The notes beneath the pieces are model-generated. The model worked only from the letters and a program-made list of their open reading frames with translations. It had not been told where the DNA came from and made no database searches. Of a stretch of 64,000 nt of DNA, positions 1-48,502 are shown piece after piece. The position numbers were made by a program, and so were the translations under genes. Positions within the stretch are counted from its first letter, which is position 1. The number at the start of each line of letters is the position of its first letter. Source of the DNA: Paramoeba atlantica (lineage: Eukaryota > Protista > Discosea); NCBI GenBank assembly GCA_977017575.1, contig CDRNVI010000157.1, positions 22,748 through 86,747 on the forward strand, read 5' to 3'.

Positions 1-273
1 AACAACACGTCCTCATTTTAAGGATAGCGGGATAAAAATGCTGGATTGGGGCCCAAATCTCCAGACGTGACACCTATTGAGAATTTATGGTCAATGATAG
101 ATGCCATAAAATGTAGAAAAGAGCCACTGAACCGTGAATTCTTAAAAGAATCCATCCCAGCTTCTTAGAATGAGCTGCTTAATGAAGTCGGTTTCGTGGA
201 ACGCACTCTAAAGAGTGTGCCAAACAGAATGCGTATTGTTATAGAGAGGGAAGGGGGGCACTGTGGGTACTAG
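1..273 (+). pseudogene. C-terminal part of a Tc1-like transposase (DD32E group), inactivated
   Basis: Manual translation gives TTRPHFKDSGIKMLDW-(frameshift at ~50)-PKSPDVTPIENLW...SVPNRMRIVIEREGGHCGY*, with an in-frame TAG at 166-168. It matches the C-terminus of 59337-60461. Confidence 0.85.
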
Positions 274-282
274 GTTTGTCAT

Positions 283-862
283 TGTTTTATCATGCACTTA
301 TAGTGCAGAGATTTACTCACCATGTCCTTATCCCGCATACGACGGGTGGATCATGTGAGGTTTCGTCCTCGCCGGAGGTGTGCGGGTGCGGAGAGCTGGC
401 GTCCCAGGTGCAGAGAGCTCGGTTGTCATGTGCAGGTGCAGAGAGCCGGATGCGTAATCCCCATATTACAGTTTCGGGGGCAATCCGGGTGCAGAGAGCT
501 GCGACAGAGCCGAGGTGCGGAGAGCTGGGCGACCGCCAGGTGCAGAGAACCGAGTCTCGTCGGCGGAGGACACGTCTAGTGGTCCTCAAGGGAGGCCACC
601 GTGACGCATGGCCCTCTCGGAGAGGAAAAAGACAAGTCGAAAAAAGCCGAGAGGGGGAAGCATACTCACTCCAGGGGAGTGAGTCGGGGAGGGGTGAAGG
701 GGTGAAAGCGCGTCCCCTGCTTCAGCGACAAGAGGGACAGTTCCGACCTTAGTGCCGGCCGGCAACGGGCATAAAAATACAGTAAGAGTATGCCCGTTGC
801 CGGGGAAAGAAAGGATTAACTAAGGAAAAAGTACCAACAAGGTACAGAAACTGTATCTTTCA
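283..862 (-). ncRNA. Dispersed spliced-leader (SL) RNA gene repeat unit, copy 1, circularly permuted
   Basis: The minus strand of 860-835 reads AAAGATACAGTTTCTGTACCTTGTTG followed by GTAC (kinetoplastid SL core plus GT donor). There is a 14-bp hairpin at 759-803. It is near-identical to 47611-48189. Confidence 0.75.
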
Positions 863-1096
863 CTTTTTCGCAAATTTCTAGAAAAACTTGCAATTGACGT
901 TGCCACCTACCGTTTTGAGCCACCTACCATTTTACAAAAAATGGCATTTATCCGGGAAACGATATATCCTTCACAGGAGGGTTGTGTAAAAGCTCTCGAA
1001 TGCGCTATTAATTTCTAAAATTTACCAAACATTTGCAAATTTGAGACCCCCCCAGCATTAGCTGATCCCCCCTGTACATGTATTTACACATGTATA

Positions 1097-1550
1097 CAGG
1101 GGTGAAAACTTCCATCTGGGGGGGGGGTCTAAAATTTGCAAAAACTTTTCAATTTCGGAAAATAATACTGCATTCGAGAGCTCTCGAAGAGTTGTATGTC
1201 TTTGCACTGGTGGCTTTTGACATATCAAATTAGAACTCCAAATACCGAATAGGACAAAAAAACAAATTGTCACTTAAAGAAAAATAAAAAATCTCAGATA
1301 TTTTTAGGAAACATTATTTTAAAACCCATGTTGCATCCACAATATGCACCCTTCTTTTCTACGATGATTCTACAACGTTTTCTGAAGTTTTTAAACTTAT
1401 TATCGAACTTATCTTTGTCTTTTGCCTGAAGTTTATCGTAAAAAACATGAATCGTTCCACCCAGAGTTTCACAGTTCCCTAGTGGACCCAAACACTTTGG
1501 TAAGTCCGGGAATAAGACTGTGTTTTCTCGAAGTCGGACACAAGAAGTAA
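1097..1550 (-). mobile_element. Decayed Tc1-like end (TIR plus remnant of transposase C-terminus)
   Basis: TA|CAGGGGTGAAAACTTCCATCTGGGGGGGGG TIR of the local Tc1 family. The minus-strand peptide RCRIIVEKKGAYCG resembles RFDIVVEKKGESCNY of 45518-45985. Confidence 0.5.
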
Positions 1551-1554
1551 TCTT

Positions 1555-1608
1555 TGTACATACACATGTACATACACATGTACATACACATGTACATACA
1601 CATGTATA
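1555..1608. repeat. 12-bp minisatellite (TGTACATACACA) x ~4.3
   Basis: Directly visible tandem repeat. Confidence 0.95.
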
Positions 1609-1846
1609 TAAATGTAATATCCATTTCACAGGGATACTCCCCAATTTTATCTTTTAAGACGTCTCCATTTTTCATTGGCCAGAAGCGTGTTTCCAGATTC
1701 CGTGAAAATGGGATTCTTTATCGCCACCACTATAATGCCTTTACATTTACCCAAGCGCGCCTATAGCACCAGGATCTATTCGAAAACCATCAAACAAATT
1801 AGCAATTTATTGTTAGCATTCTGGACTTTACGGAATCTGCTGCCGA

Positions 1847-2518
1847 TCAAGGGAAGGGAGATTCTGCAGGATCCCACACTTCAACACAAGAAGGGATCTC
1901 TCCCATAGGAAACGTTACTTTTGTGTTATAGAGCGTGAGTGTGTGTAAGCTGTGCGGAAGTTTCGAAAAATCAGGAACACCTTCAATAGGATTGTCATTC
2001 AAACGAATCGAACCCATGGTTCCTGGAAGACCAGCAAAATTTACACTGCCTTGTAGGTTGTTCTCGCTGAGGTCTAACACGCGCAGCGTAGGAGGAAGGT
2101 CATTCACTTCAATGGACCCGCTGATGCCCAGATCAATAAGCAGTAACTCTAATAGAGCTCGTGGTAATAACGAAAAGCTAACGTATGGAATCACGCCTTT
2201 TTTGTACTTGTAGAGTCCGTCGAGGTCTCTATTGTAGGCGGAGCTCAAATTCAAGAGTAATAATGAATTCGGCAAACTAGACCACTGGAAGGCGCCAGAA
2301 AGTCCGAATCCTTTCCATTCTAGCCCTACTACATTATGCGTTTCATCACAAGTCACACCCTCCCAGTCACATGCAGGCGTGTGCGTGGACCATGATTTTC
2401 TAGGGTTCGGAATGTCCTTAATGAAAAGAGCAAGAGAGTACTCCTGTGGTAAACCTGCACTACGAACTCGATGCGCCACACTTTCTGACATACTGTAGTT
2501 GTAAAAGCGAAAATACAA
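1847..2518 (-). CDS. Small LRR protein with plant-type N-cap (first ATG probably 2491)
   Basis: LPQEYSL...SWSTHTPACDWEGVTC cap followed by LxxLxLxxNxLxGx(V/I)xxxxLP repeats; no intron needed. Confidence 0.85.
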   Translation of the reverse strand: MYFRFYNYSMSESVAHRVRSAGLPQEYSLALFIKDIPNPRKSWSTHTPACDWEGVTCDETHNVVGLEWKGFGLSGAFQWSSLPNSLLLLNLSSAYNRDLDGLYKYKKGVIPYVSFSLLPRALLELLLIDLGISGSIEVNDLPPTLRVLDLSENNLQGSVNFAGLPGTMGSIRLNDNPIEGVPDFSKLPHSLHTLTLYNTKVTFPMGEIPSCVEVWDPAESPFP

Positions 2519-2864
2519 GGGATATGCTTCAACAGCAAAAGAATTAAGTGTATAGAATTAAGGTTTAAAAAGAATTTATAGGCACAGTAATCAGAGAGAT
2601 CTTCAATGCGCTAATATTTTCCGAAATTTGGAAAATATTTCAAGCTTTAGACCCCAGCATTCGCTTTGAACTATGATAAAATGATCTGATCTACTTTCCC
2701 CAAAGAAATGTTTTTACCGTTTTTAAAATCTCGGCATAATTACTAGCCTAACTAGATGGAACTCTATCTTTTAATGCACAAATAGCCTAATCGTGAACAA
2801 CTATTCAAAGAACTATTCAAAGATTTCAAATCATTTCGTCTATCTTTCATACGGTCTCACAACA

Positions 2865-3689
2865 CTACGGTGACACAAGTGCAATTTTCGTGTTTCTAAT
2901 GTTAAGATTAAACCCAACCTTGTCGGGAAGCAAACGCTTTTCGATCTCGCCATGCAGCATTACGTTATTTGACAAATCGAGCTGGTGCAATGTACTAGGA
3001 AGGCTTCTTACGTCAATTTTGCCGGAAAACCTATTTGTGTATAGTCGAAGGTGGCATAAGTTTGGGAGATCACGCAAACACACTTTTCCTGATAGCTGAT
3101 TACGGTCGAGAGAGAGATATTGCAAGTCTGAAGGTAATTCGGTTAAGCAAATTTCACCGGTAAATCGGTTAGCAGAGAGGTCCAGATCGCGCATATTTGG
3201 AGGGAGAGCTGTTAAGTCCAATGGTCCACTAAGCTCATTGTCCCGAAGACCTAAAGAAACCAACTTGCAAGACAAAACGTTCAGTGGCACTTCGCCTGAA
3301 ACTTTGGTAATAAAAACATGGAACCTGTGTACGGTCTTTGGGAGATAACCAAAATTCAACGAGCCTGTGAGTTGTTTGTATGACTTATTTGAAAATCCGT
3401 TCCAATTTATAACCGTAGTCTCATTCGCTTTATTACAAATCACGCCGTCCCACTCGCAAGCCGGGGTTGGTGTATTCCACGAGGGATGCGGATTTCCAAC
3501 ATTGCGAACAAGTTGTGCAAGTTCGTATTCTTGTGGGAGATTTGCCATGCTCACTCTTCCTCCACGTGCTCCGCGTATGGGCGTTACTTGTGCAATTTCT
3601 TGACGTACAGCAGAGTTGACTAAAGGCATAATTTTTCGACGCTTCACGGGGGACTCCAAAGTGTCGCGTAAACGTGCAGTCAGCAGCAT
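2865..3689 (-). CDS. LRR protein (274 aa from the likely ATG at 3689)
   Basis: N-terminus MLLTARLRDTLESPVKRRK is paralogous to the gene at 36275; LPQEYEL..SW..PACEWDGVIC cap; ~7 LRRs. Confidence 0.9.
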   Translation of the reverse strand: MLLTARLRDTLESPVKRRKIMPLVNSAVRQEIAQVTPIRGARGGRVSMANLPQEYELAQLVRNVGNPHPSWNTPTPACEWDGVICNKANETTVINWNGFSNKSYKQLTGSLNFGYLPKTVHRFHVFITKVSGEVPLNVLSCKLVSLGLRDNELSGPLDLTALPPNMRDLDLSANRFTGEICLTELPSDLQYLSLDRNQLSGKVCLRDLPNLCHLRLYTNRFSGKIDVRSLPSTLHQLDLSNNVMLHGEIEKRLLPDKVGFNLNIRNTKIALVSP

Positions 3690-4276
3690 ACAAAAACTAA
3701 AATAAATACAAAAAGAGTGAATGATGGTGCACTGCAAGCTTAACAAAGTGAGTCTTTTTAGTGCTTCTTGACGGGCGGTCGAACTAGTTAAGGGGTAATT
3801 TTTTAAACTACCACCGCAATAAAAGTGGTTTAAAAATAACATGAACAATTGTTTCTGCTCATGGAGTTGCGAGAGGCCTCCATACCCCACAGCTACCACC
3901 TTCTGTAGCAGGGGTCGTGAGCGACCCCTGATAAATTGCGGGAAGGTGGTAGTTGTATTGGCGAATATGAGAGGCCGAAACGCACGGAAGGGCCTGTCAG
4001 GCCAATGAACCCAGACCTTGTTTTTCTGTGCTAAAAAACTGAAAAATTATGGGAGAAGTTTAAAAAAATCCCAAATCAACTCCCAGGCCGTTTCGTGAGA
4101 GTTTGGGACCTGATATACGCGTAAAGGCCAAAATTCAACTGGAATCCGCAGAGGAAGGACGCAGAGGAAGGAGAAGAAAAAGGCAGAAGGCGGAGCCTTT
4201 TGTCTCTTTCCCGCGGTGACGACGACTTCCTCGCGTGGGAAGCTGTAAGAAGTACTAGAGAGTGCTGTAAGGAGTA

Positions 4277-4470
4277 ATGTAACCCAGGCTAAAGTGGGCG
4301 AGGGAGATACTAATGGCGCCTTTGGCAAAATACCACAAAATTGGAATGGTATCTCCCGGTTTGTAAAGCAATCTGATGTGTCAAAAAAATCGTTAACGAG
4401 AGATAATGTTCTACTTTTGTGGTGGTTTGCCAAAGGTACCTTTAGCATCTCCCTCGTGCACTTTAGCCTG
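4277..4470. mobile_element. Fold-back MITE (right end clipped), same family as 54316-54513
   Basis: CAGGCTAAAGTGGGCGAGGGAGAT...ATCTCCCTCGTGCACTTTAGCCTG with long imperfect inverted arms. Confidence 0.75.
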
Positions 4471-5158
4471 ACGAAACGTTTTATAGGCGAAAAAGTCCAT
4501 TTATCAAAATTAATCACTGGGGGAAGCTGTCCACCCACAACATTGTCAGCAACATACTATGCTAACGATAACATAACGTCAACATATTGAAAACCTCCTG
4601 TCAATTTCTTCTTTAACATAATGTCAACACAAAATACACTTGTCATTTGACTTTTTGGCTTATAGAAAATATGGGTCATTGAAAAAATAAGGAATTAGCA
4701 ACAATGTATTTCGTCAACTTGATCTCTGTCTCTATGCCTATGTTATTGAATCTGATCTCGAGGACAATACTGAGCACGGCGAGGACGAGGCATCTATTAA
4801 CGTTCGAAAGGCACAAGAAGCCTTGGTTCAAGATATAGAGAATAAACTTGTGCAACTCCGCCGTGAACTCATGAAGCAAAATTATCTTTCTCCCAACTTG
4901 CAAAAGAAAGTTGATGAGGCCGCGCAAAGGATTATTGATTATAAGGAGCAGGTGGGAGAATTAAAATGATATCGCTCCCTATCTGGAAAAGATCTGTCTC
5001 GGTTGCTTGCCGGTGATGAATGAGACAGACAGTGATAATACTCCATGTACAAAATGTAAGAAACTTCTATCCTTACGAGACGACAGAGGTCATTGGGGCA
5101 TTTTTCCTGAATCGCAATTACGTCAGATTCGCTTTGCTGCCTCTATCGCGCGACACAA

Positions 5159-5287
5159 CTTGTTGTACTTTTTCTCCTAGCTCATCTTCTCTCTCCCGGA
5201 AACGGGCATATTTTCACAATCTCAATGCCCATTTCCGGATGGCGCTAGGAGAGGAACTGTCCCTCTTGTCGCAAAGTAGGGGTGCGC
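5159..5287 (+). repeat. Diverged relic of the SL-unit 5' region (last 7 nt of exon, intron-like segment and hairpin)
   Basis: CTTGTTG-TACTTTTTCTCCTAG...CCGGAAACGGGCAT(15 nt)ATGCCCATTTCCGG...GGAACTGTCCCTCTTGTCGC aligns with the minus strand of 283-862 and 47609-48191. Confidence 0.7.
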
Positions 5288-5359
5288 CTCCCTTCCCTTA
5301 TCTCCCACCACCCCGCTCGGAACACGGTTCCGAGTCCCCATGCGCTGCAGGACCCTACT

Positions 5360-6100
5360 ACGGGACCACGCGGCGTGCCTTCACTATCCGGCGACACCGG
5401 TACTTCTGCGCGTAGAAGGCTTCCATATACCGAAAATCTCCCACACGGCGAGCAAACACGTTGTATGCGTGTTCTAGAGGATGTTCCGTGCGCCTCTCTT
5501 GCTCACCAGCCGTGGCGGATTCTCTGGGACCCCGATGCCCATGATACATCATGAATCATGACTCCATTTGTCAGCATGCATCCATGGCCCTGACCATGTT
5601 GTATCATGAACCATGGAAGTCATTTGTAGCATGTACGATGGGAATACCATCCGTGTCCCACGAATCCGTATGTCTTCCCTGGAGCATTGCGCTCACTGAA
5701 CATCTGGGAACACCTTATCTCGATGAGGCCGTCTCTTTTCGCTTTCCTGGGGAGGATATCCCGCGCTTTTCCGTGTTGCCTCGGGAGGCGAAAAGGTCCA
5801 GCAAGGAACATTGATTGCGTTTACCCCTGCTCGACCTAATTATCTCTACAGGTACTGCCCTGTATGAACAAACAACCTCTTGCGCCTACATATCGAATAT
5901 TTTGCAGTCCAGACAACAAACTTCTTCCTCATGCAGAAACTTATTTCTTATCTCGCTTTGTTCTTCGGGGCCCTCCATAAATTTTTGGAGTCGAAGTGCC
6001 AGTGTGAGTGTGGAGGGCAAAATCGTGCCGTTGGATGGAGTCCTGAAGGAACACATCTTGACTTCACTCGTCAGGACGTTGTTCTGGTACTAGGACTAAC
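5360..6100 (-). pseudogene. Possible highly decayed retroelement integrase
   Basis: Weak motifs broken by stops and frameshifts: LVLVP..HD..H.H, CxxC, SR*GVP...VS, GIPIVHAT, FMMYHG.RGPR. Confidence 0.2.
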
Positions 6101-6288
6101 TTATCGATGCAATTCATGCATCGGTGTCGGTTGTCCTATGAGGATACTCTCTTGAGCCGATGGCCCCCGTGCGTGGTAAAATCTTGGCGAATCTTTAATC
6201 TAAAGCACTACATCATGGCAATCGATCTCTGCAACGAGTGGTGTGAGATGTACACAAGCAGTAATTTGACCTACTCTAGAATATCGTA

Positions 6289-6600
6289 CGGTCCCCCCTA
6301 CTTAAGAGTCCGCCGATTTTGGGCTTTTGGACTCTTAAGTAGGGGGGTCACAATTTTCCGGACTCTTAAGTGGGGGGGTCAGCATTTTTTCACAAAATTT
6401 CAATATGACTTTACACAAGCGCGAACGTTTGTCGCCGCCGTGTAAGCGGTTGCGCTCAACTCGTTCCGACAGATGCCGACGAGCGGGTCCGGAACTTTCT
6501 CGAGATGATGAGTCTGATGAACGTCGATCGCAAAGGTTACTCTATCATCCTCACGGCTAATGGCACCGGAGTTGTGTGGAAAACTGTAAGCAGTGCATAA
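6289..6600 (+). mobile_element. pogo-like remnant (TIR-like end plus transposase fragment)
   Basis: TA|CGGTCCCCCCTACTTAAGAGTCC end. Peptide VDRKGYSIILTANGTG resembles SDREGFTCTVLTNASG of the 32164-33789 transposase. Confidence 0.4.
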
Positions 6601-6636
6601 CTGCTGTAATGGTTTTTATGACAATAATTATTAATT

Positions 6637-6712
6637 GCGGTGGTTGTATAACTACCGCTCTACCCTCGATTATTGAAAAAAAAGTGAACAAAAACGGTGA
6701 AAATATAAAGAG
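6637..6712 (+). repeat. 5' fragment of the G-tract repeat family
   Basis: GCGGTGGTTGTATAACTACCGCTCTACCCTCGATTATTG head, as at 17539, 39702 and 63597. Confidence 0.85.
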
Positions 6713-7313
6713 TCCTGCTACTCGTAGTTTTTGCAGAAACTACATGCAGCACGAACGTCGGTAGTGGGATGCAATTTGCGAAGCCCAAGGGGGTGGTATG
6801 GCGAGGGCCAGCGTGAGCGGGCCTGAGTCATACGCGACGTCGTTAGTGGGAAGCAATTTGCGAAGCCCCGTTTAACAACAACCACCGCTTTTTAACGAAG
6901 CAGCTAGCACGCCGATATTTTAAGCTTATGGTGCTGACTATTATTGTATGGGAAAGAACAAAATATCGCGCGTTGAAATAATACAAGTCAAATTTAAGTG
7001 TGGGGAAAAAGTGTAGCTCTAATGGTCCTAAAAAGTATGAGGCAAAGCATGAAAAAAAACCAGAAAATATCCGTATGTTAGAGTAGATGTTATTGCGCGC
7101 CCTGACAAAATAGTAACTGTACAACATTCTCAGAAACAAAATTCTCCGAACACTATATTATTCACACTAACACTATAGTATATAAATTAGACCGTCTAAT
7201 TCTATAATATTTAACTCCCAATTTGAATTATATCCCAGCGCAGCATCAACTATTTATTTGTCAATTATTTTTTGTATGCTGAGGTTCGTCGTGTCTATTT
7301 CCCATTACAGGTA

Positions 7314-8042
7314 TTAACTCACCATCGTCCACGTATTCCTCCTCGGTCTGTAGCGTGTCACCTTACCATTGCTTACCGTAATCTTTGTGTGCGCTACAGT
7401 ATAATACAGATTTTTTAACTCGTCTCTGATTTTTAGGAAGCCTTCAAGTTCTGCATTAAAAGCTAAGCTCATGTTACGCAAGTTTTCGTGCACGAAATCG
7501 AATTCAATATGACCAGACAATTTATTGTCACACATATTAAGATAGACTAGAAAGGGTGGCAAGTGACGAAAATCTGGAGTGCCCGTGAACTTGTTGTTGG
7601 ATATGGTAATGTCTTTCAATTTCGGAGGCAACTGATAGAAGGGAAACTCACCCGATAGAGAATTGGAGGCTAGTTGTAAAGTTTCCAATTCGCACGGCAA
7701 ATAGTTTACATTGAACTGACCTTGTAGTTTCTCGCTAGGGCCCATCATGTGACTCCAGATTATCCAAATCACGTCGCCCTTGTCGTTACATCTGACTCGA
7801 TCCCATCTACATCCCGGGGTATCGGTGGACCATGACGGTGGAGGGTTTTCTACGAGTCTCATCAAATCGTACTCCACGGGTAACGACACGGCACTGACTT
7901 TGGATGGACGAGATGTTCCAGTCACATTAGAACTGCTCGTTGAAGGCGTCGTCTCGGAAGAATTCGTTTCACTGTGGGCTTCCTTCCTTAACGGTTCCGT
8001 TACATCCGCCGAAGGCATAGAGCAAAGCATAGCAATAATCAA
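7314..8042 (-). CDS. LRR protein with Ser/Thr-rich N-terminus
   Basis: PSKVSAVSLPVEYDL..SWSTDTPGCRWDRVRC cap and ~4-5 LRRs. Confidence 0.9.
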   Translation of the reverse strand: MIIAMLCSMPSADVTEPLRKEAHSETNSSETTPSTSSSNVTGTSRPSKVSAVSLPVEYDLMRLVENPPPSWSTDTPGCRWDRVRCNDKGDVIWIIWSHMMGPSEKLQGQFNVNYLPCELETLQLASNSLSGEFPFYQLPPKLKDITISNNKFTGTPDFRHLPPFLVYLNMCDNKLSGHIEFDFVHENLRNMSLAFNAELEGFLKIRDELKNLYYTVAHTKITVSNGKVTRYRPRRNTWTMVS

Positions 8043-9204
8043 TGTTTTAGAAAGACTAGCCTTGAAGTAATGTAAAGAAGTACAATTCCAGGTTGTGTTT
8101 CACGGGTAAAACAACTTTTTATGTGGGAAAAAAGGACCTTATCAAATATTATCTCGCCGCACCTCGTCACGGGCCCCACGTCAAAGGACGAAACAATTGG
8201 GGATCTTGCTAGACAGCACAAGGAAATTCGAGACAGGCATCCGAGATCCATCCACTCTAGCTGGATCTCTCAATCACATAAATTCTCTGGTCAGTACATT
8301 GCCGACTATGGAAAGGAGCAGTAGTTCCGCAGCCTCAAGTTGAGATGTTTTGTCGTCCAAGTACTGTGACCCCCCCCTTTAATATGGACACTTTTTCGGC
8401 TTTTGTCCATAATAAAGGGGGGGGGGCGATGAAAGGGGTGTGAAAAAAAAATTGCCTTATTGGTAGCCAGGGGTTTATTATGTCCCAGCAATCCCCTTAC
8501 GGAGGCATGTACATCGTGAGAGCGGAACCCCAATACACTCGATGGCCAACACAAATGTCAAACTCACGCTAAGCACATCCTCGATCCTACAAAAAATGAC
8601 CAAGGAATAAAACTATGACGAGTGACCAGCTTGTCGCCTGAATCGGAACAAAATGAAAACCCTGTATCGAAGGCATGCTCTAGGAAGCAATGCAGGAAGG
8701 CGTAGCTTTCCGATCGTTTGGAGAACACACGTAATCGAAACGCCCGTTCGCCAACATTTTCTACCAATATTTATGCCCTCAGGTAATGGGCGTGTTCCGA
8801 TCCAAACTAAGATTCATGAAGCATTGCAGGAAAATGTTTTTTGTCGGAACTTGCAGCACGAATTCTTCCTTCAAAGGTGGAGGTGGGAACTCATCCGGAA
8901 TGATTCCTGTCGTGGCACGGTCGGCCGAATCGCTTTTTAGAGGTTTAACCGATCCTGGTGCCTTCTGGCAAATATTGCCAAAAATGAGCAGGTTTAGAAG
9001 GTTAGAAAGATAGCTCTACTTCCCTCTTCACTCATTCTGCTTTTTGACTCCCAAAATCAACAGTTTTGGGATAAATAGCGTATCTGGACAAGTAAAGTAT
9101 CGAAAAATCAATCTCTTTTCAAGGCTGACATACGTACCTTTCCTCAGACATAAACGGACCTCGGGCAATAAATTTACGTACCTTTCCTCTGAGAATAAAG
9201 TTAT

Positions 9205-9333
9205 GGGCTGCGGGTGAGGCCCAAAACGAGATCTCGCGGCAGCGGATTTGCCTCAGGAAGGTGGTTGGGCGGCGCCAAAACGAGATCATGCGAGATCACA
9301 TGAGATCACACGAGATCATACCCGCAGCCCCTC
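9205..9333. mobile_element. Degenerate GAG...CTC-family MITE
   Basis: GGGCTGCGGG ... CCCGCAGCCCCTC ends with internal (C/T)GAGATCA repeats. The left terminus is damaged and no clean TSD is visible. Confidence 0.55.
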
Positions 9334-9453
9334 GAATAATGAACGTATGAATCTATGACCCCAAGTTCAAATTCTCCTCCATAAATCTTCGCAATGCATT
9401 ACACTCTTTCGTACACTCTTTCTTCTATATCCTACCCTGAGAGCATCGGCTAT

Positions 9454-10268
9454 TCAAATAAGCATGATATCCGGGGTCTGCGGTGGATCATACGAACTGA
9501 AACGGTTTGCCATCAACCGAAAAATCACAAAGCCATGCGGTAAATTCCCCCATCGCACAACTCCGGAAAGTTCATTGCAGCTGAGATCCAAGCTGTACAT
9601 AGTTTTCGGGAGCTTCGTTAAATCGATGGATCCGGAGAACGCGTTGCCACGAAGGAGCAAAGACTCCAGCGTGGGTGGGAGCGACGTAAGCACCAAAGGG
9701 CCCGTAAAGCCGCTCTCATTGGCCCAAACCATTTGAAGGGTACGTGGAAGTCGAGTGAGGTCGAATTCCCCGGCTAATAAATTGTTTGAAATGGAGAGCA
9801 GTTCGAGTTTTTGGGATAACGCCTCTAGTTCTATAGGACCTGAAAAATGGTTCTCGTCGAGCTTAAGTGTGGAGACACTCTCAGGAAGTGGATTCAGTCC
9901 TGTGGGAAGAGTACCAGAGAATTTACAGTGTTGCAACTCAAGACAAGTCAGAGCACGTGGCAGTGAGCCCCATGGAATCGTTCCGATCAGCTCCGTACCG
10001 TAAATAATACAAGTTTTGATCGTGTCGGGGAGAAGCTCCCAGCGCAGTTCCCCTTTATCCGTTGGGTAGCGAACTCAATATATCTTGGTCTTCCGTCTTC
10101 GTTTAATTTTACTCCTTCCCACTCGGTTAATGGGGTGGATTCCTTCCACGTAGAATGCGGATTCGTCACATGCTTTAAGAAACAAAGAAGTTGCACATGA
10201 GGGGGCAACAAGGTGTTCCTTACCTTAGCCCCGCGTGAGACGTCCGCGCAAACAGTTCTCCGGAGCAT
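9454..10268 (-). pseudogene. LRR gene split by a 1-nt frameshift in a G run near 10050 (pseudogene or sequencing error)
   Basis: The cap LPPHVQL..STWKESTPLTEWEGV is in ORF 9987-10268. The LRRs (ELRWELLPDTIK...) continue in the frame of ORF 9454-9936. Confidence 0.85.
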
Positions 10269-10374
10269 AAAAACGATAATCTGTAAACAACGTTCAGATT
10301 TTCTTAGATTTTACAGTGCACCAGTAGAGTAGTTAGGAGCTATTTCATGAAATATAGATTTCCTATAAACAAAT

Positions 10375-10422
10375 GAGAGGTTGCGGTGGCGAGATTTCAC
10401 TAGGTTTCACCTGCAGCCCCTC
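10375..10422. mobile_element. 48-bp GAG...CTC mini-element with 4-bp TSD AAAT
   Basis: AAAT|GAGAGGTTGCGG...CTGCAGCCCCTC|AAAT. Confidence 0.7.
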
Positions 10423-10428
10423 AAATTA

Positions 10429-10572
10429 CTGTGAACTTTTATACTTCCGCCGGTTTCAGACTTTTAGAACAACACGTTTAGGAGATTTTGAAGGGCGGAA
10501 CCTGAACTTTTGAAATTTCTTTTATGGCTTATAAAGGGGTTTCACAGCCTGAAGTATAAAGGGGGGTATCAG
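10429..10572. mobile_element. TA-flanked MITE of the CTGTGACCCC family
   Basis: TA|CTGTGAAC-TTTTATACTTC ... GAAGTATAAAGGGGGGTATCAG|TA, related to 26397-26715. Confidence 0.5.
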
Positions 10573-11135
10573 TAACTTGTTTAGGGGGTCCATTCCGCCT
10601 GTCATTAATAATTATAATGATAATCCTGAAGAATGATAATTTCTTTGATATTATTATTACAGTAAATTATTTCAGAATGCTCAGTTGTACGTTGACACAG
10701 AAAAAACGGCTTTTTTGTCGTTTTTCGTCACTATTCTCAGAATTAGTCTGTTGAACGTTGACAGGCACTTTTTTATGAGGTCAAATCCCAATTCTCATTT
10801 TTAAAAAAGAAAACGTTTCGCAAGGAAAACGTTAGCAGCGGAGCAGCTGGCCGCTTTCGGTGCACAAAAATGACCTCCAGAGATCTCCAACTGTCTCCTC
10901 GGTTTACGGAGTTGCCGCTCTATCAGTAGAACACCGCGGTCGAACAGCGCCAGTTTCCTTTTGTGCAATAGCGCTTTGTTTTCAGAAAAACAAAGTTTCA
11001 TTACTCGTAGCCACCTGAATGGGACAACGATAAAATTGATCTCCTGTGATTCCCTGTGACCCCATCTATCTCCACCTACCTATACTCCCTCAGTAATGGA
11101 ATCGATTTTGGACTATAAAGGACAAATCCTTGTTA

Positions 11136-13038
11136 CTGGGGGGTGTATGCCACCCACGGTATACGATACCCCCCCAGTAATAGACCCCCCCGCAACAGAG
11201 ATTGGACGATTTTTCGGCTGACCCCCAGTAACAGAGATTTAGCTCGGGATGGTGGTGGGAGGGGGGAGGGGGTGTTGGGGCGGGTGAGGGTCGCTGGGCT
11301 GGGTGAGGGTGGTTGCGCGGGAGCGAATGGCGTAGTTGCGGGGTTGTCAGGGCAGAAAATTAACGAACTCGTGAGTAAAAAAGGTTTTCCCACCAAAAAA
11401 GCATACCCCCCCAGTAAAAGAGATTTGGCCATTTGGGTCCAAAATCGATTCTATTACTGTGGGGGGATATATAGTATCCCCAGTGATCTCCACTTATCTC
11501 TCGCATACTCTCCAGTGAGTGAAGATGAAGCAGTGAGTTAATCATTGAGAGAACGAAGGCGCTTTTTTTCAATTCTCATTTTTGAGTGTAAAATTGAATT
11601 GAACGTTGACACATGACCGAAGCTCCATTCTCATTTTTCAAGGTGCATTCTCATTTTAGCCAGTTGTACGTTGACAGCCCAATTCTCATTTTTAGCGACT
11701 CTCAGAATAGTGACGTTTACTGTACCATTATCATTATTATTATTAATGACCTAGTGTAGCTTCTGTCTGCCACAGTCCGCTTGGAAGAAGGTCGTCCACC
11801 AAAGCTTGTAAATTTTTCAATGGAGCCCGATTCATCTAATGGGCGCTTCTTTTTCAATGATCGAGAAGTCATGGAAAAATAAATACGAAAATATGGCCCA
11901 AAACATGAAAATAAGTTGATCATTTTTTAGTTCAAAAAACGTACTTTTTAAGACACAAAACCTTTTGTATGAAAATTCTGTATGAAAATAAGTTGATAAT
12001 TTTTTAAGAGTTTTCACCACATAGAATGATAATTTTTTTAAGCTTATCATTATTAATGACAGGGGGAGTATATTTTCCGTGCGGATATGTAGCTAGGGCG
12101 TTTAAGGGACAAAACATCAACATTCATCACGTCAATAGATTCAGGAATATTTTTTCGGTTCAATGTAGCTTGAAAACAAAAAAGTCTGTAAAAATGGGAG
12201 GAAGGCATTGGTACCAAAAGTTGGATTATTCTGGACCTTCGCAAATTCTTCATTTTTAGTCGCTTCGTTCGAAACGCGTTCGAAAAGCGGCAGTTTTCAA
12301 CACGAAGGCAGTGGTGGCTTCAAAGAGGGTTCAAAAAGGTCGGAAGCCCTTGGCGGCACACCTTAGTTATTTTTTACAGGTCAGTCACTATGATGTGGAG
12401 TAGAAATACACCCCTGTCCAGCTTCATTTACCCACCCTCCTTACAGGTCTTGTATTTTGTTCGATTTTAGAAATATTTGATATGGGGCTGTTTTTCGACC
12501 CAATCGTCTCGAATCCGATGTCCTCTTCAATCGAGCGACCTTTTTTTCTTCCGAAACCTTAAAATTTTTGTCGAAACCCCCGATTTTGTTTTGCCCACCC
12601 TAAAAAAATCATTATTTTCAGTTTTTTCCTTAAGAGTTTTCAGTTTTCTCCTTTCAGTTTTTAGTTTTTTCCTTTAGCCAAGAGATAACTGACTTCCTCT
12701 TCTCCCGAATCAGCGTAATCCACCGGAAAGTCGAACCTTGCTCATAGCACGGTACTAGGAACTATAATCCTTGTGTGCTTTAGCTAGAAGGAATAGACAC
12801 GAAATATAAGACGCTATGTTTCAAACATCCTTTAACAGTAGAACATGTTGACAAATTAAGAAATTCATTCAAAAACTATCGCAAATGACTTCAATTTGTG
12901 GTAAAAAAGAAAGGTTATCATATTGGATATTGAATACGTATCTAGTGTCATTTTTGCGTTCTCTAAGCACGATTTTTTCCAAATGCATAAACTTTTTCCC
13001 GAAAGCATGAAAAAAATTACCGTATACCCCCCCCCCAG
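11136..13038. mobile_element. Putative TA-flanked non-autonomous element
   Basis: TA|CTGGGGGGTGTAT ... TATACCCCCCCCCCAG|TA with internal repeats of ACCCCC(C)AGTAA. Pairing of the two ends is uncertain. Confidence 0.3.
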
Positions 13039-14484
13039 TAATAGACTGTGGGTGATGCACACCCGCAGCGCCTCACGTAATATTACTGTGGCTTCCGCTT
13101 TATTATGGACATTTTTTTCCGCTTTTGTCCATAATAAAGGAGGGGGGTGATGGAAAGGGTGTGAAAAAAAGAAGCGGCGCCATGTTTTCTCATACTACGG
13201 CAAAAAAAATCTAAACTGTAAAATGCATTGCCACGAGGGCGGGCGAGGATCTTTGCTTTTCTTTTTTTAAACATGCTCATTGTTCTTTGTTTTATCCAGT
13301 TCCTGGGCACAAAATTCTCTTGATGAGATCTGCAAAATGCAACAAAGTGGGGGGTCACATTTCGTGAGCCGGGGTTCATTAAGCTCGGTTCGTCCCCTTT
13401 TCTCGTTTGTGTGATGTGAAAGCTCGCGAAATTACCGCGCATCAAAACTTCTCCTCTCATGAGAAATTCATTTTTTTAATATTTTTTTGCTTATTTTTAT
13501 TGAAAACGAGAGGTCTCGTTCCCCTAGCAACGAGCTTCGCCGCTATTTTTTAATATTTTTTAATATTGGCCCACTTGTGGCCCTTGGCCGCGGAGTGTTT
13601 GTTTTTTAAAGTTGGTGTGGTATGATGATGCACAAAAATAAAGCAGATTTTTTTTTCGTTTTTTAAAATGATCTAAAAATGGTGGGAAAGTGTAGATCCC
13701 ATGATTTTGAACGAGAAAGTGATATCCTAACCCCCTTAGACCCCTTCAAGAGGAAAATAAAGGGAATTGCTTAAAAAAGTTGAATTTTCACCGTTTCAAG
13801 AAAAAATCAATCAAAGTCAAATATTCCACCACGTGAAAAATTCAATGTTTGTTATCTGTTTTTGCTCATTTTTGTTGCAAACCAAAGATCTCGTTCCCCT
13901 AGCGAAGAGCTGTGACGCCATTTTCATATTGCCCCCCTTCTCCCCCCCTGGCCGCTGAACATGTAATTTTTCTGCTAATATTAGTATGACTCTGTAAAAA
14001 AAATATTGAAAAAGTGTGGTTTTATTTTTTATTCGTGAAGAGGTCTAAAAACAGCGGGAACGTGCAGATCTCAAAATTTTACACGATAAGATGGTGCTAT
14101 AACCTATCCACGTCGCGCTGTGCCAAAAATAAGGTGGGGTGCCTTATTGATGAAGGGGGGTTTATATTCATTATACCAAATGAGTCATTTCGCAGCTTAG
14201 GCACCACCACCAGTGCATCACACAAATGGGAAAAACGTAGGTGCCGCGAAGCGTCGCCGAAATTGTTTTGCCTTTCACTTTCGAATTCTTCCATATTCTG
14301 TCAATCACCACAGATGCGTTGCCCCCTTCTAAGTAGCGGGCTTTGCGAATTTTGGAGAAAAGTGAGGAGAAAAAGGCTGTGAGGCGAAGCGTACAGCATG
14401 CGTGACTTCTATTCCGAAAACAACCATCGCGCTTATCGAATCGATTTTTTTTAAATATTAATCTAGTAGTATAAATTAGTTAGT

Positions 14485-15213
14485 TTATTGATCTACGACT
14501 ACAAGTTTGGTATTCGAAGAACATCTCAATAATTGAATACTTTTTTTTAATCGCGGGTGGAGCTTGCTTGCGACTATTGTACCTTCCAGAAGCGGATTTT
14601 TATCTAAAGTAAGGGTATCTAGCTTCTCCGGAAGGATTAATAAATCTATCATTCCTTCGAATTCGTTTCCAGACAAGTATAAAGCTTCCAGAGTGTCCGG
14701 GAGTGCCCCGAAATCTAATTTTCCAGTCAAGAAATTATCACTAACGTCAAGATGTACCAGATCGACGGGCAACTGTGTAAGGCATATATCACCAGACAAT
14801 TCGTTTGTTTCCATCCATGCGCCGGTAGAAAGCTTCGGGAGTCTTGTCAGATCCGGATTGCCTGTAAATTTGTTTCCTCCCAGAAAGAAATGCCTTAACT
14901 TTACTAATGGGAAAAGGTCACATGGGACGTTTTCCCCTGATATGCTGTTGTATTCAATATCGAACGTCTCAACGGACATTAAAATACATGCAAACTTCAT
15001 GGATCCACTCAACTTTTGACGGCTCCACCTTATTTCAGTAACTTTCTCCTCTGAATTACACTTGATGCCTTTCCATTTGCAAGCAGAAATGTCAGAATTC
15101 CAGCTCTCATGACGAGTGTGCAAACCACTAATGAGCCGCTCAAGATCCATTTCTTGTGGTAAATTCAATGCACCAACCTTCGACGGGAGCGTGGATGGCG
15201 CTTGGGAATCCAT
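14485..15213 (-). CDS. LRR protein, MDSQAP subfamily
   Basis: Close paralogue of 36755-37468; LPQEMDL..SW..DISACKWKGIKC cap plus LRRs. Confidence 0.9.
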   Translation of the reverse strand: MDSQAPSTLPSKVGALNLPQEMDLERLISGLHTRHESWNSDISACKWKGIKCNSEEKVTEIRWSRQKLSGSMKFACILMSVETFDIEYNSISGENVPCDLFPLVKLRHFFLGGNKFTGNPDLTRLPKLSTGAWMETNELSGDICLTQLPVDLVHLDVSDNFLTGKLDFGALPDTLEALYLSGNEFEGMIDLLILPEKLDTLTLDKNPLLEGTIVASKLHPRLKKSIQLLRCSSNTKLVVVDQ

Positions 15214-15798
15214 TGCACATAAATTAGATAAAATATTCAAGGTATTAATTTGCTTTAATGGGTATTAAAGTTATGCAGGGGGAATCAGCTCATATGCAGG
15301 GGGGATCAGCTAATGCTGGGGAATCTAAATTTCGTAAAACTTGGCCTACAAAATTAACGGGGTTCCGGTTTAGCATACCTGTGACCTGTACCATACCGGG
15401 GGGTATGGTATCGACCCAGGGCCGATAGCATACCCCCAACCCCTATGGCAACATATGTTGTGTCAACAAAGGTCGTGTTAATCCCAGAAATTAACACGAT
15501 TCTTTTTTGACACAACATAATTTCTTCCCTGTAATCAGACTTTCAAATGTACGCATTTGGGATTTTGTTGTTCCGTTTCTTAACGCGCAAACTCTTTGTG
15601 TTGAGATCTATAACATGCTACAAAAATTAGCTCAAACGAGCGAAGCATTGAGATTTTGGAGGGAGTGCCTTATTTTGCTCAGGGGTTTATGTAAATTGTC
15701 CTATGTAAAGAATGGGGGATTACTGATACAAGCTCATAAAGTTGTTGAGGTTTATGAAGCTGTGACAATCAAAGCTTGGGCAATATATTTTTTGTATC

Positions 15799-41159: not shown

Positions 41160-41849
41160 TTAATAACCCCACCCAAGGTTCATCAAGTTTTCTATATCAC
41201 ATCGACTTAACGGGCCATTGCTAACAATGATTTGAGTTCCGTTAACGTCATAAAATATGTCTTTCGGCAAATCTATGACATCCAGTTTTCCTTGCAACAT
41301 TTCATTACCACTTATATACGCAAACCTCAACGAGGCTGGAAGGGCAAAGAAGTCAACGTATCCTGAAAATCGGTTTTTCTCAATGTTCAAAACTTCCAAC
41401 AACGGAGGCAAATCGTAAGAATTGAAGGTTCCATGAAAGTTGTTCTCCTGTATTAATAGCGTCTCTAACGTTTTAGGCAAAACGTCGAACGGAAAATCTC
41501 CGGAAAGCTTGTTGTGGAAAGCGCGAAATGCTTTTAACTGAGAAGGAAGATATCCGAGGTCTAATGAGCCGCAAAGAGTGTTATACGTCCACCTGATATC
41601 TGTCACAGTTTCATTCTTGTCACACTTAACTCCTTCCCACAGACATCCAGGACACTCTGTCGTCCAGGATTTACGAGGGTTTTCTATGCCTCTGACAAGC
41701 CGCGCTAAATCATACTCGATGGGAAGATCGGTGCCGCGTATCTTAGACCCGGGATAGAGTGCACTCTTTTTTGTACCGTTTTCCTTCAAATCCTGGTCAG
41801 CACAGTGCAAAAGACCCATTACATGAGACATCATGTGTAAAATCAGCAT
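41160..41849 (-). CDS. LRR protein, intact paralogue of the SL-interrupted gene at 47254-48502
   Basis: LPIEYDL..SWTTECPGCLWEGVKC cap plus LRRs. Confidence 0.9.
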   Translation of the reverse strand: MLILHMMSHVMGLLHCADQDLKENGTKKSALYPGSKIRGTDLPIEYDLARLVRGIENPRKSWTTECPGCLWEGVKCDKNETVTDIRWTYNTLCGSLDLGYLPSQLKAFRAFHNKLSGDFPFDVLPKTLETLLIQENNFHGTFNSYDLPPLLEVLNIEKNRFSGYVDFFALPASLRFAYISGNEMLQGKLDVIDLPKDIFYDVNGTQIIVSNGPLSRCDIENLMNLGWGY

Positions 41850-41859
41850 TCTTAGATGT

Positions 41860-47253: not shown

Positions 47254-48502
47254 TTAAGTATAAGGTACGAACTCGAATGTTTTATATCGACATAACGGGC
47301 CATTGCTAACAATGACTTGAGTTCCACTAGCGGAGTAAAATATGTCTTTCGGCAAATCCATAACATTTAGCTTTCCTTGCAACATTTCATTACCACTTAG
47401 AAACGCAAACCTCAACGAGGCTGGAAGGGCAGAGAAGTCAACGTATCCTGAAAATTGGTTATCCTCAATGTTCAAAACTTCCAATAACGGAGGCAAATCG
47501 TAAAAATTGAAGGTTCCACGAAAGTTGTTCTCCTTTATTAATAGCGCCTCTAAAGTTTTAGGCAAAACGTCGAACGGAAAATCTCCAGAGAGCTTGTTGC
47601 GGAAAGCGAGTGTTTTATCATGCACTTATAGTGCAGAGATTTGCTCACCATGTCCTTATCCCGCATACGACGGGTGGATCATGTGAGGTTTCGTCCTCGC
47701 CGGAGGTGTGCGGGTGCGGAGAGCTGGCGTCCCAGGTGCAGAGAGCTCGGTTGTCATGTGCAGGTGCAGAGAGCCGGATGCGTAATCCCCATATTACAGT
47801 TTCGGGGGCAATCCGGGTGCAGAGAGCTGCGACAGAGCCGAGATGCGGAGAGCTGGGCGACCGCCAGGTGCAGAGAGCCGATTCTCGTCGGCGGAGGACA
47901 CGTCTAGTGGTCCTCAAGGGAGGCCACCGTGACGCATGGCCCTCTCGGAGAGGAAAAAGACAAGCCGAAAAAAAGCCGAGAGGGGGAAGCACACTCACTC
48001 CAGGGGAGTGAGTCGGGGAGGGGTGAAGTGGTGAAAGCGCGTCCCCTGCTTCAGCGACAAGAGGGACAGTTCCGACCTTAGTGCCGGCCGGCAACGGGCA
48101 TGAAAATACAGTAAGGGTATGCCCGTTGCCGGGGAAAGAAAGGATGAACTAAGGAAAAAGTACCAACAAGGTACAGAAACTGTATCTTTATCGAAATGCT
48201 TTTAACTGAGAAGGAAGATATCCGAGGTCTAATGAGCCGCAAAGAGTGTTATACGTCCACCTGATATCTGTCACAGTTCCATTCTTGTCACACTTAACTC
48301 CTTCCCACAGACATCCAGGACACTCTGTCGTCCAGGATTTACGAGGGTTGTCTATGCCTCTGACAAGCCGCGCTAAATCATACTCGATGGGAAGATCGGT
48401 GCCGCGTATCTTAGACCCGGGATAGAGTGCACTCTGTTTTGTACCGTTTTCCTTCAAATCCTGGTCAGCACAGTGCAAAAGACCCATTACATGAGACGTC
48501 AT
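47254..48502 (-). pseudogene. LRR gene interrupted in-coding by the SL-gene unit
   Basis: The 5' half (48192-48502) and 3' half (47254-47608) rejoin as KAFR|AFRNKLSG, matching KAFRAFHNKLSG of the paralogue 41160-41849. Confidence 0.92.
47609..48191 (-). ncRNA. Dispersed SL RNA gene repeat unit, copy 2, circularly permuted, blunt insertion
   Basis: The minus strand starts ATAAAGATACAGTTTCTGTACCTTGTTG|GTAC (48191-48164) and ends ...GATAAAACACT (47609). Joining the ends restores AACACTATAAAGATACAG..., similar to the kinetoplastid AACGCTAT...GATACAG. Confidence 0.8.

What the first reader, a model, noticed from the sequence alone, without database searches (positions are those of the whole stretch)
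283..862. Second, independently located SL unit opened at essentially the same point, inside a Tc1 3' region
Seen: this copy is near-identical to 47611-48189 but has entirely different flanks. It sits 9 bp after a Tc1 transposase stop codon, and the Tc1 3' region and TIR resume at 863. Its ends lack only 2 nt on each side of the junction seen in copy 2 (CT|AT), and no consistent TSD is present. Inference: two insertions with the same opening point argue for a site-specific mechanism rather than random circle integration. Both copies are in the same orientation as the local genes.
Basis: partly seen in the sequence, partly recalled or inferred. Interest (0 to 1): 0.8.

Follow-up and report, generated by a model that had tools for sequence, protein, structure and literature searches.

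The report
Mobile spliced-leader RNA gene copy
This 578-base stretch is one copy of a young, many-copy mobile element derived from the organism's spliced-leader RNA gene. Its uniform ends are the ends of the element family, most likely copied through RNA, and not the opening point of a DNA circle.

Summary
Window 283-860 (not 862) is 98.1% identical to 47611-48189, with unrelated flanks. It lies 9 bp after the stop of a decayed Tc1-like transposase and upstream of that element's 3' inverted repeat. An empty version of each insertion site exists.

The two copies are not special. Eight further loci from the same assembly, plus read depth, show a family of roughly 25 or more copies at 97-99.8% identity, in two subfamilies.

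In spliced-leader (SL) sense, on the minus strand, each copy has three parts:
- the last 26-28 nt of a euglenozoan-type SL exon;
- a GT donor followed by a covariation-supported SL-RNA fold;
- about 430 nt carrying six copies of a 12-nt motif.

The 3' ends lie within 2 nt of each other in most independent insertions. Most 5' ends lie within 3 nt; some are truncated. Two lineages lack exactly the 15 nt between the donor and the first AG, which points to an RNA intermediate. A reverse-transcriptase element with an R2/CRE-type nuclease region carries the same 28-nt head and abuts a unit.

My reading is a non-autonomous, SL-RNA-gene-derived retroposon (confidence about 0.6). First-stage notes record the same unit elsewhere in this genome.

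The parts
283..860 (-). Copy 1 of the SL-derived unit (unit nt 3-581, subfamily A), inserted in a Tc1-like element
   Evidence: 98.1% identical to copy 2. 99.8% identical to the spliced variant L008. Empty-site contig joins 281 to 858.
835..860 (-). 3' part of the spliced-leader exon (AAAGATACAGTTTCTGTACCTTGTTG), followed by the GT donor at 833-834
   Evidence: The core ACAGTTTCTGTAC equals that of the Diplonema papillatum leader quoted in the PMC10161547 supplement. The same 28 nt is fused to unrelated sequence exactly at this boundary in L006, L002 and L008.
820..825 (-). CCTTAG, the first AG after the donor; used as a splice acceptor in variants L008 and L004
   Evidence: In L008 and L004 the leader is joined directly to the base after this AG.
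711..832 (-). Structured SL-RNA body: a 14-bp hairpin enclosed by the CCUUAGU/ACUAAGG stem, followed by a terminal stem-loop
   Evidence: RNAalifold on 5 diverged members gives 4 pairs with compensatory changes. Single-sequence fold z = -7.8.
635..640 (-). T6 run in SL sense; a possible normal end of the SL RNA
   Evidence: Read from the sequence. The terminator role is inferred from kinetoplastid SL genes.
385..550 (-). Six copies of a 12-nt motif (GGTGCRGAGAGC on the + strand) at irregular spacing
   Evidence: 12 matches in the window, all inside the two units; 0.24 expected by chance. Also kept in the 90%-diverged copy L004.
283..306 (-). 3' terminus of the unit in SL sense: hairpin GCAC-UAUAA-GUGC, then AUGAUAAAACA(CU). 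A TATAAG lies 17-22 nt from the full-length end.
   Evidence: The terminus falls at nt 581-583 in most independent insertions; two end at nt 573-574.
1..273 (+). C-terminal remnant of a Tc1-like transposase (frame-broken), stop at 271-273
   Evidence: Sequence reading. Weak HTH_Tnp_Tc3_2 hit in the upstream part seen in L003.
953..1072 (+). 3' inverted repeat of the Tc1-like host element
   Evidence: Reverse-complement match to L003 1668-1782, 84% over 120 bp.
47609..48191 (-). Copy 2 of the unit (nt 1-583, subfamily B), a blunt insertion that truncates an LRR gene
   Evidence: The paralogue at 41201-41842 is continuous across 41523|41524. The LRR ORF 48188-48502 ends at a stop created by the insert.
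41523..41524 (.). Empty target site in the intact LRR paralogue
5143..5300 (+). Old, diverged relative of the SL-RNA body (unit nt about 20-150) without the leader core
   Evidence: 76% blast match. Carries the compensatory stem changes.

Best explanation
The stretch is a dead copy of a non-coding, roughly 583-nt retroposon family derived from the spliced-leader (SL) RNA gene of a euglenozoan-type protist.

Structure, on the minus strand:
- It starts inside the leader exon, at the A of ATAAAG. This is probably exon nt 11 of 38.
- It runs through the splice donor and the folded SL-RNA body.
- It continues for about 360 nt past a T-run and ends at ..GATAAAACA(CT).

Proposed mechanism (inferred):
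- An over-long SL-gene transcript, sometimes itself trans-spliced at its first AG, is reverse-transcribed.
- The reverse transcriptase comes from SL-associated retrotransposons that carry a restriction-like endonuclease of the R2/CRE/NeSL type.
- The copy is inserted at unrelated sites without a target duplication.

The uniform ends are therefore the ends of the template RNA or cDNA. The 5' end coincides with the position where such a retrotransposon joins SL sequence, so a site-specific step by that enzyme (or a block to reverse transcription there) probably sets it.

Shown here: independence of the copies, family size, termini, spliced variants, and the adjacent reverse-transcriptase element.

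Inferred: the RNA template, the enzyme responsible, and how the two termini are formed.
For: 1. Independent insertions. The empty site of copy 2 is in a paralogue. The empty site of copy 1 is in reads. The two copies belong to different subfamilies, defined by 5 diagnostic sites, and all other differences are private to single copies, as expected from a few source genes.

2. A dispersed family. Antisense-ORF relatives lie on about 15 contigs of one assembly. Eight independent loci were read: L001, L002, L004, L006, L007, L008, L009 and L010. L003 and L005 are near-duplicates of the window and of L004. Read depth over the unit is about 25-300 times that of its flank.

3. Termini.
- 3' end at nt 581-583 in W1, W2, L001, L002a, L004, L006b, L007, L008, L009 and L010. 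Three more are inferred from protein N-termini.
- 5' end at nt 1-4 in most copies. Others start at nt 7, 32, 105, 131 and 147.

4. RNA processing. L008 (99.8% identical to copy 1) and the older L004 lack exactly unit nt 29-43, from the GT donor to the first AG.

5. Leader function. The same 28-nt head is joined at the exon boundary to unrelated bodies: a 4.9-kb reverse-transcriptase element in L006, a poly(A)-tailed retrocopy with a target duplication in L002, and a shorter leader fragment (its last 16 or so nt) in L008.

6. Candidate machinery. The L006 element has an RVT_1 domain. Its C-terminal region has a CCHC motif and an RPD..E..K motif, and resembles zinc-binding reverse-transcriptase tails with a weak PD-(D/E)XK fold link. 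Its 3' end abuts ATAAAG of a unit, and the whole 5.5-kb composite sits inside an LRR ORF.

7. Clean insertions. W2 is exact. In L007 the flanks join in frame within a Brr2/SNRNP200-like ORF.

8. Conserved RNA fold. Four compensatory pairs across diverged members.
Against: - There is no poly(A) tail and no target duplication, so the classic retroposition hallmarks are missing. Blunt, slightly nibbled ends would equally fit end-joining capture of a DNA fragment.
- My copy set was found through an antisense ORF that begins at the unit's SL-sense 3' end. The contrast between a fixed 3' end and a truncated 5' end is therefore partly an ascertainment effect.
- How an RNA would end exactly at ..ACACU is unexplained. 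Why cDNA copies start at exon nt 11 rather than nt 1 is also unexplained.
- A TATAAG lies 17-22 nt before the unit's end, and the motif array resembles a spacer or promoter. Both suggest the 3' end may lie just upstream of a transcription start, which favours a whole-repeat (DNA) origin.
- No RNA data could be laid on the region: the one RNA-labelled run gave nothing.
- The 38-nt leader rests on a single locus (L002).
Confidence: 0.6

Rival explanations
1. DNA-fragment capture. An SL-specific endonuclease cuts SL genes in a tandem array at a fixed position. This releases unit-length linear DNA, or opens unit circles, which end-joining then captures at breaks elsewhere.
For: - Blunt insertion with no duplication or loss in W2, and 2-nt microhomology in W1.
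- Both ends vary by only 0-3 nt in most copies.
- The 5' end equals the point where a reverse-transcriptase element with a restriction-like nuclease region joins SL sequence in L006.
- This is close to the nt 11/12 site used by CZAR/SLACS in trypanosomes (PMC5814959).
- The TATAAG and the motif array at the 3' end look like an upstream promoter region.
- First-stage notes list tandem dimers of the unit.
Against: - The precise donor-to-AG deletion in two lineages with otherwise identical termini needs RNA.
- No CT|AT tandem junction appeared in contigs of three runs or in the ORF set.
- The unit's 3' end does not carry the (AA)CTTTAACG seen upstream of ATAAAG in L002.
- Large truncations were seen only at the SL-sense 5' end, although this sample is biased.
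Confidence: 0.25
2. Segmental duplication: one copy was duplicated from the other together with its surrounding DNA.
For: Only that the two copies lie 47 kb apart in a region with recent LRR duplicates. L003 shows that the copy-1 locus itself exists twice, colinear over 3.7 kb at 98.6%.
Against: - The flanks of copy 1 and copy 2 share nothing.
- Each has its own empty site.
- They belong to different subfamilies.
Confidence: 0.02
3. The dispersed units are working or recently working SL RNA genes. On this view the organism keeps its SL genes scattered rather than in an array, and the units are maintained by selection.
For: - High identity among copies.
- Conserved fold with covariation.
- No classical SL array has been noted so far in the scan's other windows.
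- Depth of the intron part is no higher than that of the rest of the unit.
Against: - Copies lack the first roughly 10 exon nt and any upstream promoter.
- They interrupt genes: an LRR gene, a Brr2-like ORF, and a reverse-transcriptase ORF.
- Some are truncated.
- Differences between copies are private and scattered, as in neutral decay.
Confidence: 0.08

Closest known systems
SINEs with small-RNA-gene heads (tRNA, 7SL, 5S, snRNA-derived) and non-autonomous derivatives of R2-type elements
   Same: - Short, non-coding and many-copy.
- The head is copied from a small nuclear RNA gene.
- Subfamilies with private mutations.
- 5'-truncated members.
- Dependence on a reverse transcriptase encoded elsewhere.
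- Like R2-type elements, no poly(A) tail and no, or only tiny, target changes.
   Different: - The head is an SL RNA that keeps its intron and starts inside the exon.
- No internal polymerase III promoter was seen.
- No shared tail with a partner element was demonstrated.
- Insertion sites are not specific, unlike R2-type elements.
CZAR / SLACS / CRE site-specific retrotransposons of trypanosomatid SL genes
   Same: - They are tied to the SL gene.
- They cut the mini-exon near its 5' end, between nt 11 and 12 (PMC5814959).
- Here the unit's 5' end, and the junction of the L006 reverse-transcriptase element with SL sequence, lie at the corresponding place (probably nt 10|11).
   Different: - The unit encodes nothing.
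- It lies outside SL genes, at scattered sites.
- It is made of SL-gene sequence itself rather than being inserted into it.
Dispersed SL fragments in Diplonema papillatum and partial leaders on retrotransposon loci in flatworms
   Same: - Leader sequence scattered through the genome.
- Attributed to reverse transcription of leader-carrying RNAs (PMC10161547 supplement; PMC12582326).
   Different: - Those are mostly exon pieces attached to other sequences.
- Here a discrete 583-nt family keeps the unspliced intron plus about 430 nt of downstream sequence.
- It has fixed termini and 97-99.8% identity among copies.
Orphons (solitary dispersed members of tandem gene families, including mini-exon orphons of trypanosomes; recalled from my own knowledge)
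   Same: Single SL-gene-like units away from any array.
   Different: - Orphons are usually few and have ragged ends.
- Here the copies are numerous, have uniform ends and include spliced variants.

Membership tests
SINE-like non-autonomous retroposon | Short, non-coding and multi-copy with dispersed, unrelated insertion sites | tested here: met
   - 578-583 bp.
- The only long ORF is antisense, has no Pfam domain, and is frame-shifted between copies.
- Eight or more independent sites.
- Read depth 25-300 times that of the flank.
SINE-like non-autonomous retroposon | Passage through RNA | tested here: met
   - Exact loss of the 15 nt from the donor GT to the first AG in L008 and L004.
- 5'-truncated copies with intact 3' ends (L007, L002a).
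- This is shown for the family, not for copy 1 itself.
SINE-like non-autonomous retroposon | Target-site duplication and an A-rich or simple-repeat tail | tested here: not met
   - W2 is exact, W1 shows 2-nt microhomology, and L007 is in frame.
- The unit ends in ..AAAACA(CT) with no tail.
SINE-like non-autonomous retroposon | 3' end shared with, or recognised by, a partner autonomous element | tested here: inconclusive
   - In L006 a unit directly follows the reverse-transcriptase element, and the two form a single insertion in an LRR ORF.
- No second copy of that element was available for comparison.
Functional SL RNA gene | Complete leader exon followed by a GT donor | tested here: not met
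   - The donor is present.
- The exon starts at ATAAAG or AAAG, whereas one retrocopy (L002) extends (AA)CTTTAACG further upstream.
- The Diplonema leader is 39 nt.
Functional SL RNA gene | Conserved stem-loops supported by covariation | tested here: met
   Four compensatory pairs in the hairpin and its enclosing stem.
Functional SL RNA gene | Tandem-array organisation, often with 5S rRNA | tested here: not met
   - No Rfam family reached its threshold in the window.
- No tandem junction was seen in the loci or the reads.
CRE/SLACS/CZAR-type SL-specific retrotransposon | Encodes a reverse transcriptase and a restriction-like endonuclease | tested here: not met
   The unit is non-coding. These features belong to the neighbouring element in L006.
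CRE/SLACS/CZAR-type SL-specific retrotransposon | Inserted in the SL exon at a fixed position | tested here: not met
   Host sites are a Tc1-like element, LRR genes, a Brr2-like gene and a reverse-transcriptase ORF.
Orphon or array unit moved as DNA | Sequence equals one period of the source array | not testable with these tools
   The source array, if any, was not in the window, the ten loci or the contig tables. The tools give no DNA search of the assembly.

The most novel reading that the evidence does not exclude
The unit may be a complete SL-gene repeat minus the first roughly 10 exon nt.
- Both of its ends would be set by the two staggered cuts, or by cDNA trimming, of an SL-specific retrotransposon nuclease.
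- It would carry the SL promoter at its 3' end, so that a landing next to another unit, or next to leader-like sequence, recreates a transcribed SL gene.
- In that case the SL genes of this protist spread and renew themselves as a retrotransposon-driven mobile cassette.
Probability: 0.12. Interest if true: 0.8.

Novelty: new variant of a known kind. Interest (0 to 1): 0.5.

Why it matters
- It would add the spliced-leader RNA to the short list of small RNA genes that have given rise to a retroposon family. Here the template keeps its intron and can itself be trans-spliced.
- The family is young. It disrupts genes: an LRR gene in the window, and elsewhere a Brr2-like splicing helicase ORF. It also marks insertion polymorphisms or recent duplicates.
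- Its 5' end coincides with the place where an SL-associated retrotransposon joins leader sequence. This offers a handle on how such enzymes treat leader-containing nucleic acids.
- For annotation, these units should not be mistaken for working SL genes.

Tried and rejected
- Rfam, at gathering thresholds on the whole window and at permissive thresholds on 200-950: no ribozyme, 5S or SL family, only chance-level hits. A self-cleaving ribozyme setting the ends therefore has no support.
- Exact scan of JGI metagenome contigs for the leader plus donor: nothing.
- Paper search for the leader string: nothing relevant.
- Exact look-ups of window ORFs in the contig index: nothing.
- A homology search with the antisense ORF then worked.
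- A search with the short SL-sense ORF, meant to reveal what lies upstream of the leader genome-wide, found no candidates.
- The Atlas search on the ADP/ATP carrier did not identify the organism.
- Other copies of the L006 reverse-transcriptase element were sought among the loci by blastn and tblastn: none.
- A PDB sequence search with its C-terminal region: no significant match.
- The insert acting as an intron of the Brr2-like gene: the only plausible GT..AG pair would break the frame (sequence).
- Helitron, inverted-repeat transposon or CRISPR-like readings: the termini and the motif array do not fit.
- An early idea that the X1 contig with 11 nt between two units shows the intact leader: dropped. 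Its depth is single-copy, and the L002 extension differs from it.

Full report
**1. The observation**

- Window 283-860 and 47611-48189 are 98.1% identical over 579 aligned positions. The alignment stops dead at both edges.
- A 12-nt motif (GGTGCRGAGAGC) occurs 12 times in the window, six per copy, against 0.24 expected by chance.
- The left flank of copy 1 is the frame-broken C-terminus of a Tc1-like transposase, with its stop at 271-273, nine bases before the insert.
- The same locus on a second contig (L003) shows a weak HTH_Tnp_Tc3_2 hit upstream. It also shows an inverted repeat pair, L003 1668-1782 against window 953-1072.
- The insert therefore lies inside the transposon, between the transposase stop and the 3' inverted repeat.

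**2. Which strand matters**

- The reverse complement of the right end reads AAAGATACAGTTTCTGTACCTTGTTG, followed by GTAC.
- The core ACAGTTTCTGTAC is that of the Diplonema papillatum spliced leader as printed in the supplement of PMC10161547. From my own knowledge it is also the core of kinetoplastid leaders.
- All numbering below is in this sense. The full insert of copy 2 (reverse complement of 47609-48191) is nt 1-583. It begins AT AAAG... and ends ...GATAAAACA CT.

**3. Both copies are true, independent insertions**

- An LRR paralogue at 41201-41842 is continuous across 41523|41524, exactly where copy 2 sits. Copy 2 is therefore a 583-bp insertion with no duplication and no loss. It truncates the LRR reading frame.
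- For copy 1, contigs of public runs of the same organism include one that joins 281 to 858. It skips 576 bp, with two ambiguous bases, at about the depth of single-copy sequence. An empty version of the Tc1-like site therefore exists, and the junction involves 2 nt of microhomology or a 2-bp loss.
- L003 carries the same insertion in the same context. It is colinear with the window for 3.7 kb at 98.6%. It is a haplotig or recent duplicate, not a separate event.

**4. A family, not a pair**

- Word depth over the unit is about 1,200-16,000 in run X1, against about 55 for the adjoining unique contig.
- No tool searches the assembly by DNA. I therefore used the long antisense ORF (window 276-749) as a handle.
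- That search returned 12 protein clusters, about 20 sequences, all from one ENA assembly.
- Fetching their contigs gave loci L001-L010.
- Blast of the unit against these loci gave the following copies, in unit nt:

| Copy | Unit nt | Note |
|---|---|---|
| W2 | 1-583 | |
| W1 (and L003) | 3-581 | |
| L001 | 3-583 | |
| L006b | 1-582 | |
| L009 | 3-581 | |
| L010 | 7-581 | |
| L008 | 1-28 joined to 44-581 | spliced variant |
| L002a | 32-583 | |
| L007 | 147-583 | |
| L004 (and L005) | 4-28 + 44-178 + 105-581 | older copy |
| L006a | 131-574 and 4-293 | older copy |

- Protein N-termini add three more sites ending at about nt 581 and one at about nt 573.
- The young copies are 97.4-99.8% identical. 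They fall into two subfamilies at five diagnostic positions, and L007 carries a mixture of the two subfamily states.
  - Subfamily A: W1, L003, L008, L009, L010.
  - Subfamily B: W2, L001, L002a, L006b.
- All other differences are private to single copies. This is the pattern expected from a few source genes emitting copies.
- The two window copies belong to different subfamilies.

**5. What the unit is made of**

- Nt 1-28 is the 3' part of the leader exon.
- The same 28 nt, ending at the same base, is fused to unrelated sequence in three places:
  - at the head of a 4.9-kb reverse-transcriptase element (L006, position 15526);
  - at the head of a poly(A)-tailed retrocopy (L002);
  - as a shorter fragment in L008.
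- That boundary is therefore a working splice donor.
- Nt 29 to about 150 fold into a long hairpin enclosed by a stem that pairs CCUUAGU with ACUAAGG, followed by a further stem-loop. Across five diverged members, four pairs change on both sides and stay paired. The fold of one copy has z = -7.8.
- A T6 run follows at about nt 220.
- The remaining 360 nt hold the six motif copies, then a short hairpin, then the end ..AUGAUAAAACA(CU).

**6. Evidence for an RNA step**

- L008 is 99.8% identical to copy 1, yet lacks exactly nt 29-43. This is the stretch from the donor GT to the first AG, which follows a pyrimidine run.
- The older L004 lacks the same 15 nt.
- The simplest reading is that a leader was trans-spliced onto a unit transcript and the product was copied back into DNA.
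- L007 and L002a keep the exact 3' end but start at nt 147 and nt 32.
- Caveat: my copies were ascertained through an ORF that starts at the SL-sense 3' end. The asymmetry between the two ends is therefore partly built in.

**7. The probable machinery**

- In L006 the unit is directly preceded by a degenerate element with an RVT_1 domain.
- That element's C-terminal region has a CCHC motif and an RPD..E..K motif. Its nearest Atlas clusters are zinc-binding reverse-transcriptase tails, with a weak structural link to PD-(D/E)XK nucleases.
- From established knowledge of R2, CRE and NeSL elements, this is the layout of retrotransposons carrying a restriction-like endonuclease.
- Its 3' end abuts ATAAAG of the unit. 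The whole 5.5-kb composite interrupts an LRR reading frame.
- In trypanosomes, CZAR and SLACS insert between nt 11 and 12 of the mini-exon (PMC5814959).

**8. Where the exon really starts**

- The L002 retrocopy has a poly(A) tail and a target duplication (A-run plus TGAA). Its 5' end extends (AA)CTTTAACG upstream of ATAAAG.
- That gives a 38-nt leader beginning AAC and containing AACGAT, as the Diplonema leader does.
- If this is the true leader, the units start at exon nt 11, and their 3' end (..AAAACACT) is not exon nt 1-10.
- This rests on one locus.
- Against it, a TATAAG lies 17-22 nt before the unit's full-length end, as if a transcription start followed.
- I could not resolve this point. 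The one RNA-labelled run gave no contigs, and a search designed to reveal sequence upstream of the leader genome-wide found nothing.

**9. Mechanism**

- Most likely (about 0.6): retroposition of an over-long SL-gene transcript by SL-associated reverse transcriptases, with blunt, duplication-free integration as in R2-type elements.
- The common 5' end could be set in three ways:
  - by the enzyme's own site-specific cut acting on leader-containing cDNA or duplex;
  - by a block to reverse transcription;
  - by transcription starting there in retrotransposon-modified SL genes.
- The main rival (about 0.25) is release of unit-length DNA from an array by the same nuclease, followed by end-joining capture. 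It explains the blunt junctions and the two fixed ends at once, but not the spliced variants. No array junction was seen.
- Segmental duplication is excluded for copy 1 versus copy 2.

**10. Orientation**

- In the window both units point the same way as the neighbouring genes.
- Across the loci this holds in about five or six of eight cases. L007 is antisense to its host gene. This sample is too small for a test.

**11. Known or new**

- Scattered leader fragments ascribed to retrotransposon activity are reported for Diplonema papillatum (PMC10161547 supplement) and for flatworms (PMC12582326).
- I did not find a report of a discrete, young family made of the unspliced SL RNA plus downstream sequence, with fixed ends and trans-spliced members.
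- I rate it a new variant of a known kind.
- First-stage notes of this scan list the same unit in other parts of this genome: tandem dimers in LRR genes, a copy antisense in a retrotransposon ORF2, and SL-headed elements. Those are unverified leads, but they agree with what I found in independent loci.

Noticed in passing
L007:10000-10437: A 5'-truncated unit (nt 147-583) sits antisense inside a Brr2/SNRNP200-like helicase ORF. The flanks join in frame (..MERIT|YISEALYKGKQVLVFVH..), so this haplotype of an essential splicing gene is interrupted by a clean insertion.
   Followed up: partly
L006:10007-15528: A 4.9-kb degenerate retrotransposon (reverse transcriptase plus a restriction-like nuclease region) is headed by the same 28-nt leader part and followed directly by a full unit. 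The 5.5-kb composite is a single insertion in an LRR ORF.
   Followed up: partly
L002:3605-4290: A leader-headed, poly(A)-tailed, non-coding retrocopy of about 650 bp has a target duplication (A-run plus TGAA). Its 5' end extends the leader by (AA)CTTTAACG. It is the only evidence here for a 38-nt leader.
   Followed up: partly
window 988-1222 (also 44490-44700 and 46079-46188): A palindromic, MITE-like repeat just downstream of the Tc1-like element. Its read depth is as high as that of the SL unit (about 9,000-11,000 in X1).
   Followed up: no
run X1 contig, laid at window 860 back to 280: One contig at single-copy depth has two units head to tail, separated by 11 nt (ATGTGCATTGA in SL sense). 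It is either a dimer or a leader-like locus with a different first part.
   Followed up: no
window 61897-61921 (-), 29433-29448 (-); L001 6299 (+): Short leader-like strings GATACYGTTTCTGTAA. At 61921 the string is preceded by AACGATAAC. They could be relics of a second leader type or part of another repeat.
   Followed up: no
L004:10747-10790 (and L005): A leader head starting at AAG directly follows a truncated older leader piece (..AGTTTCTGTAC). This stacked relic looks like the result of repeated insertion or splicing cycles.
   Followed up: no
P0010 (contig of 232 kb, not fetched): The unit's antisense ORF is fused in frame to a PIF1-type helicase fragment (PF05970). This suggests a unit, ending about 10 nt short, was inserted into a Helitron-like helicase gene.
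   Followed up: no
window 41858-41900: A (GA)n microsatellite immediately upstream of the intact LRR paralogue.
   Followed up: no
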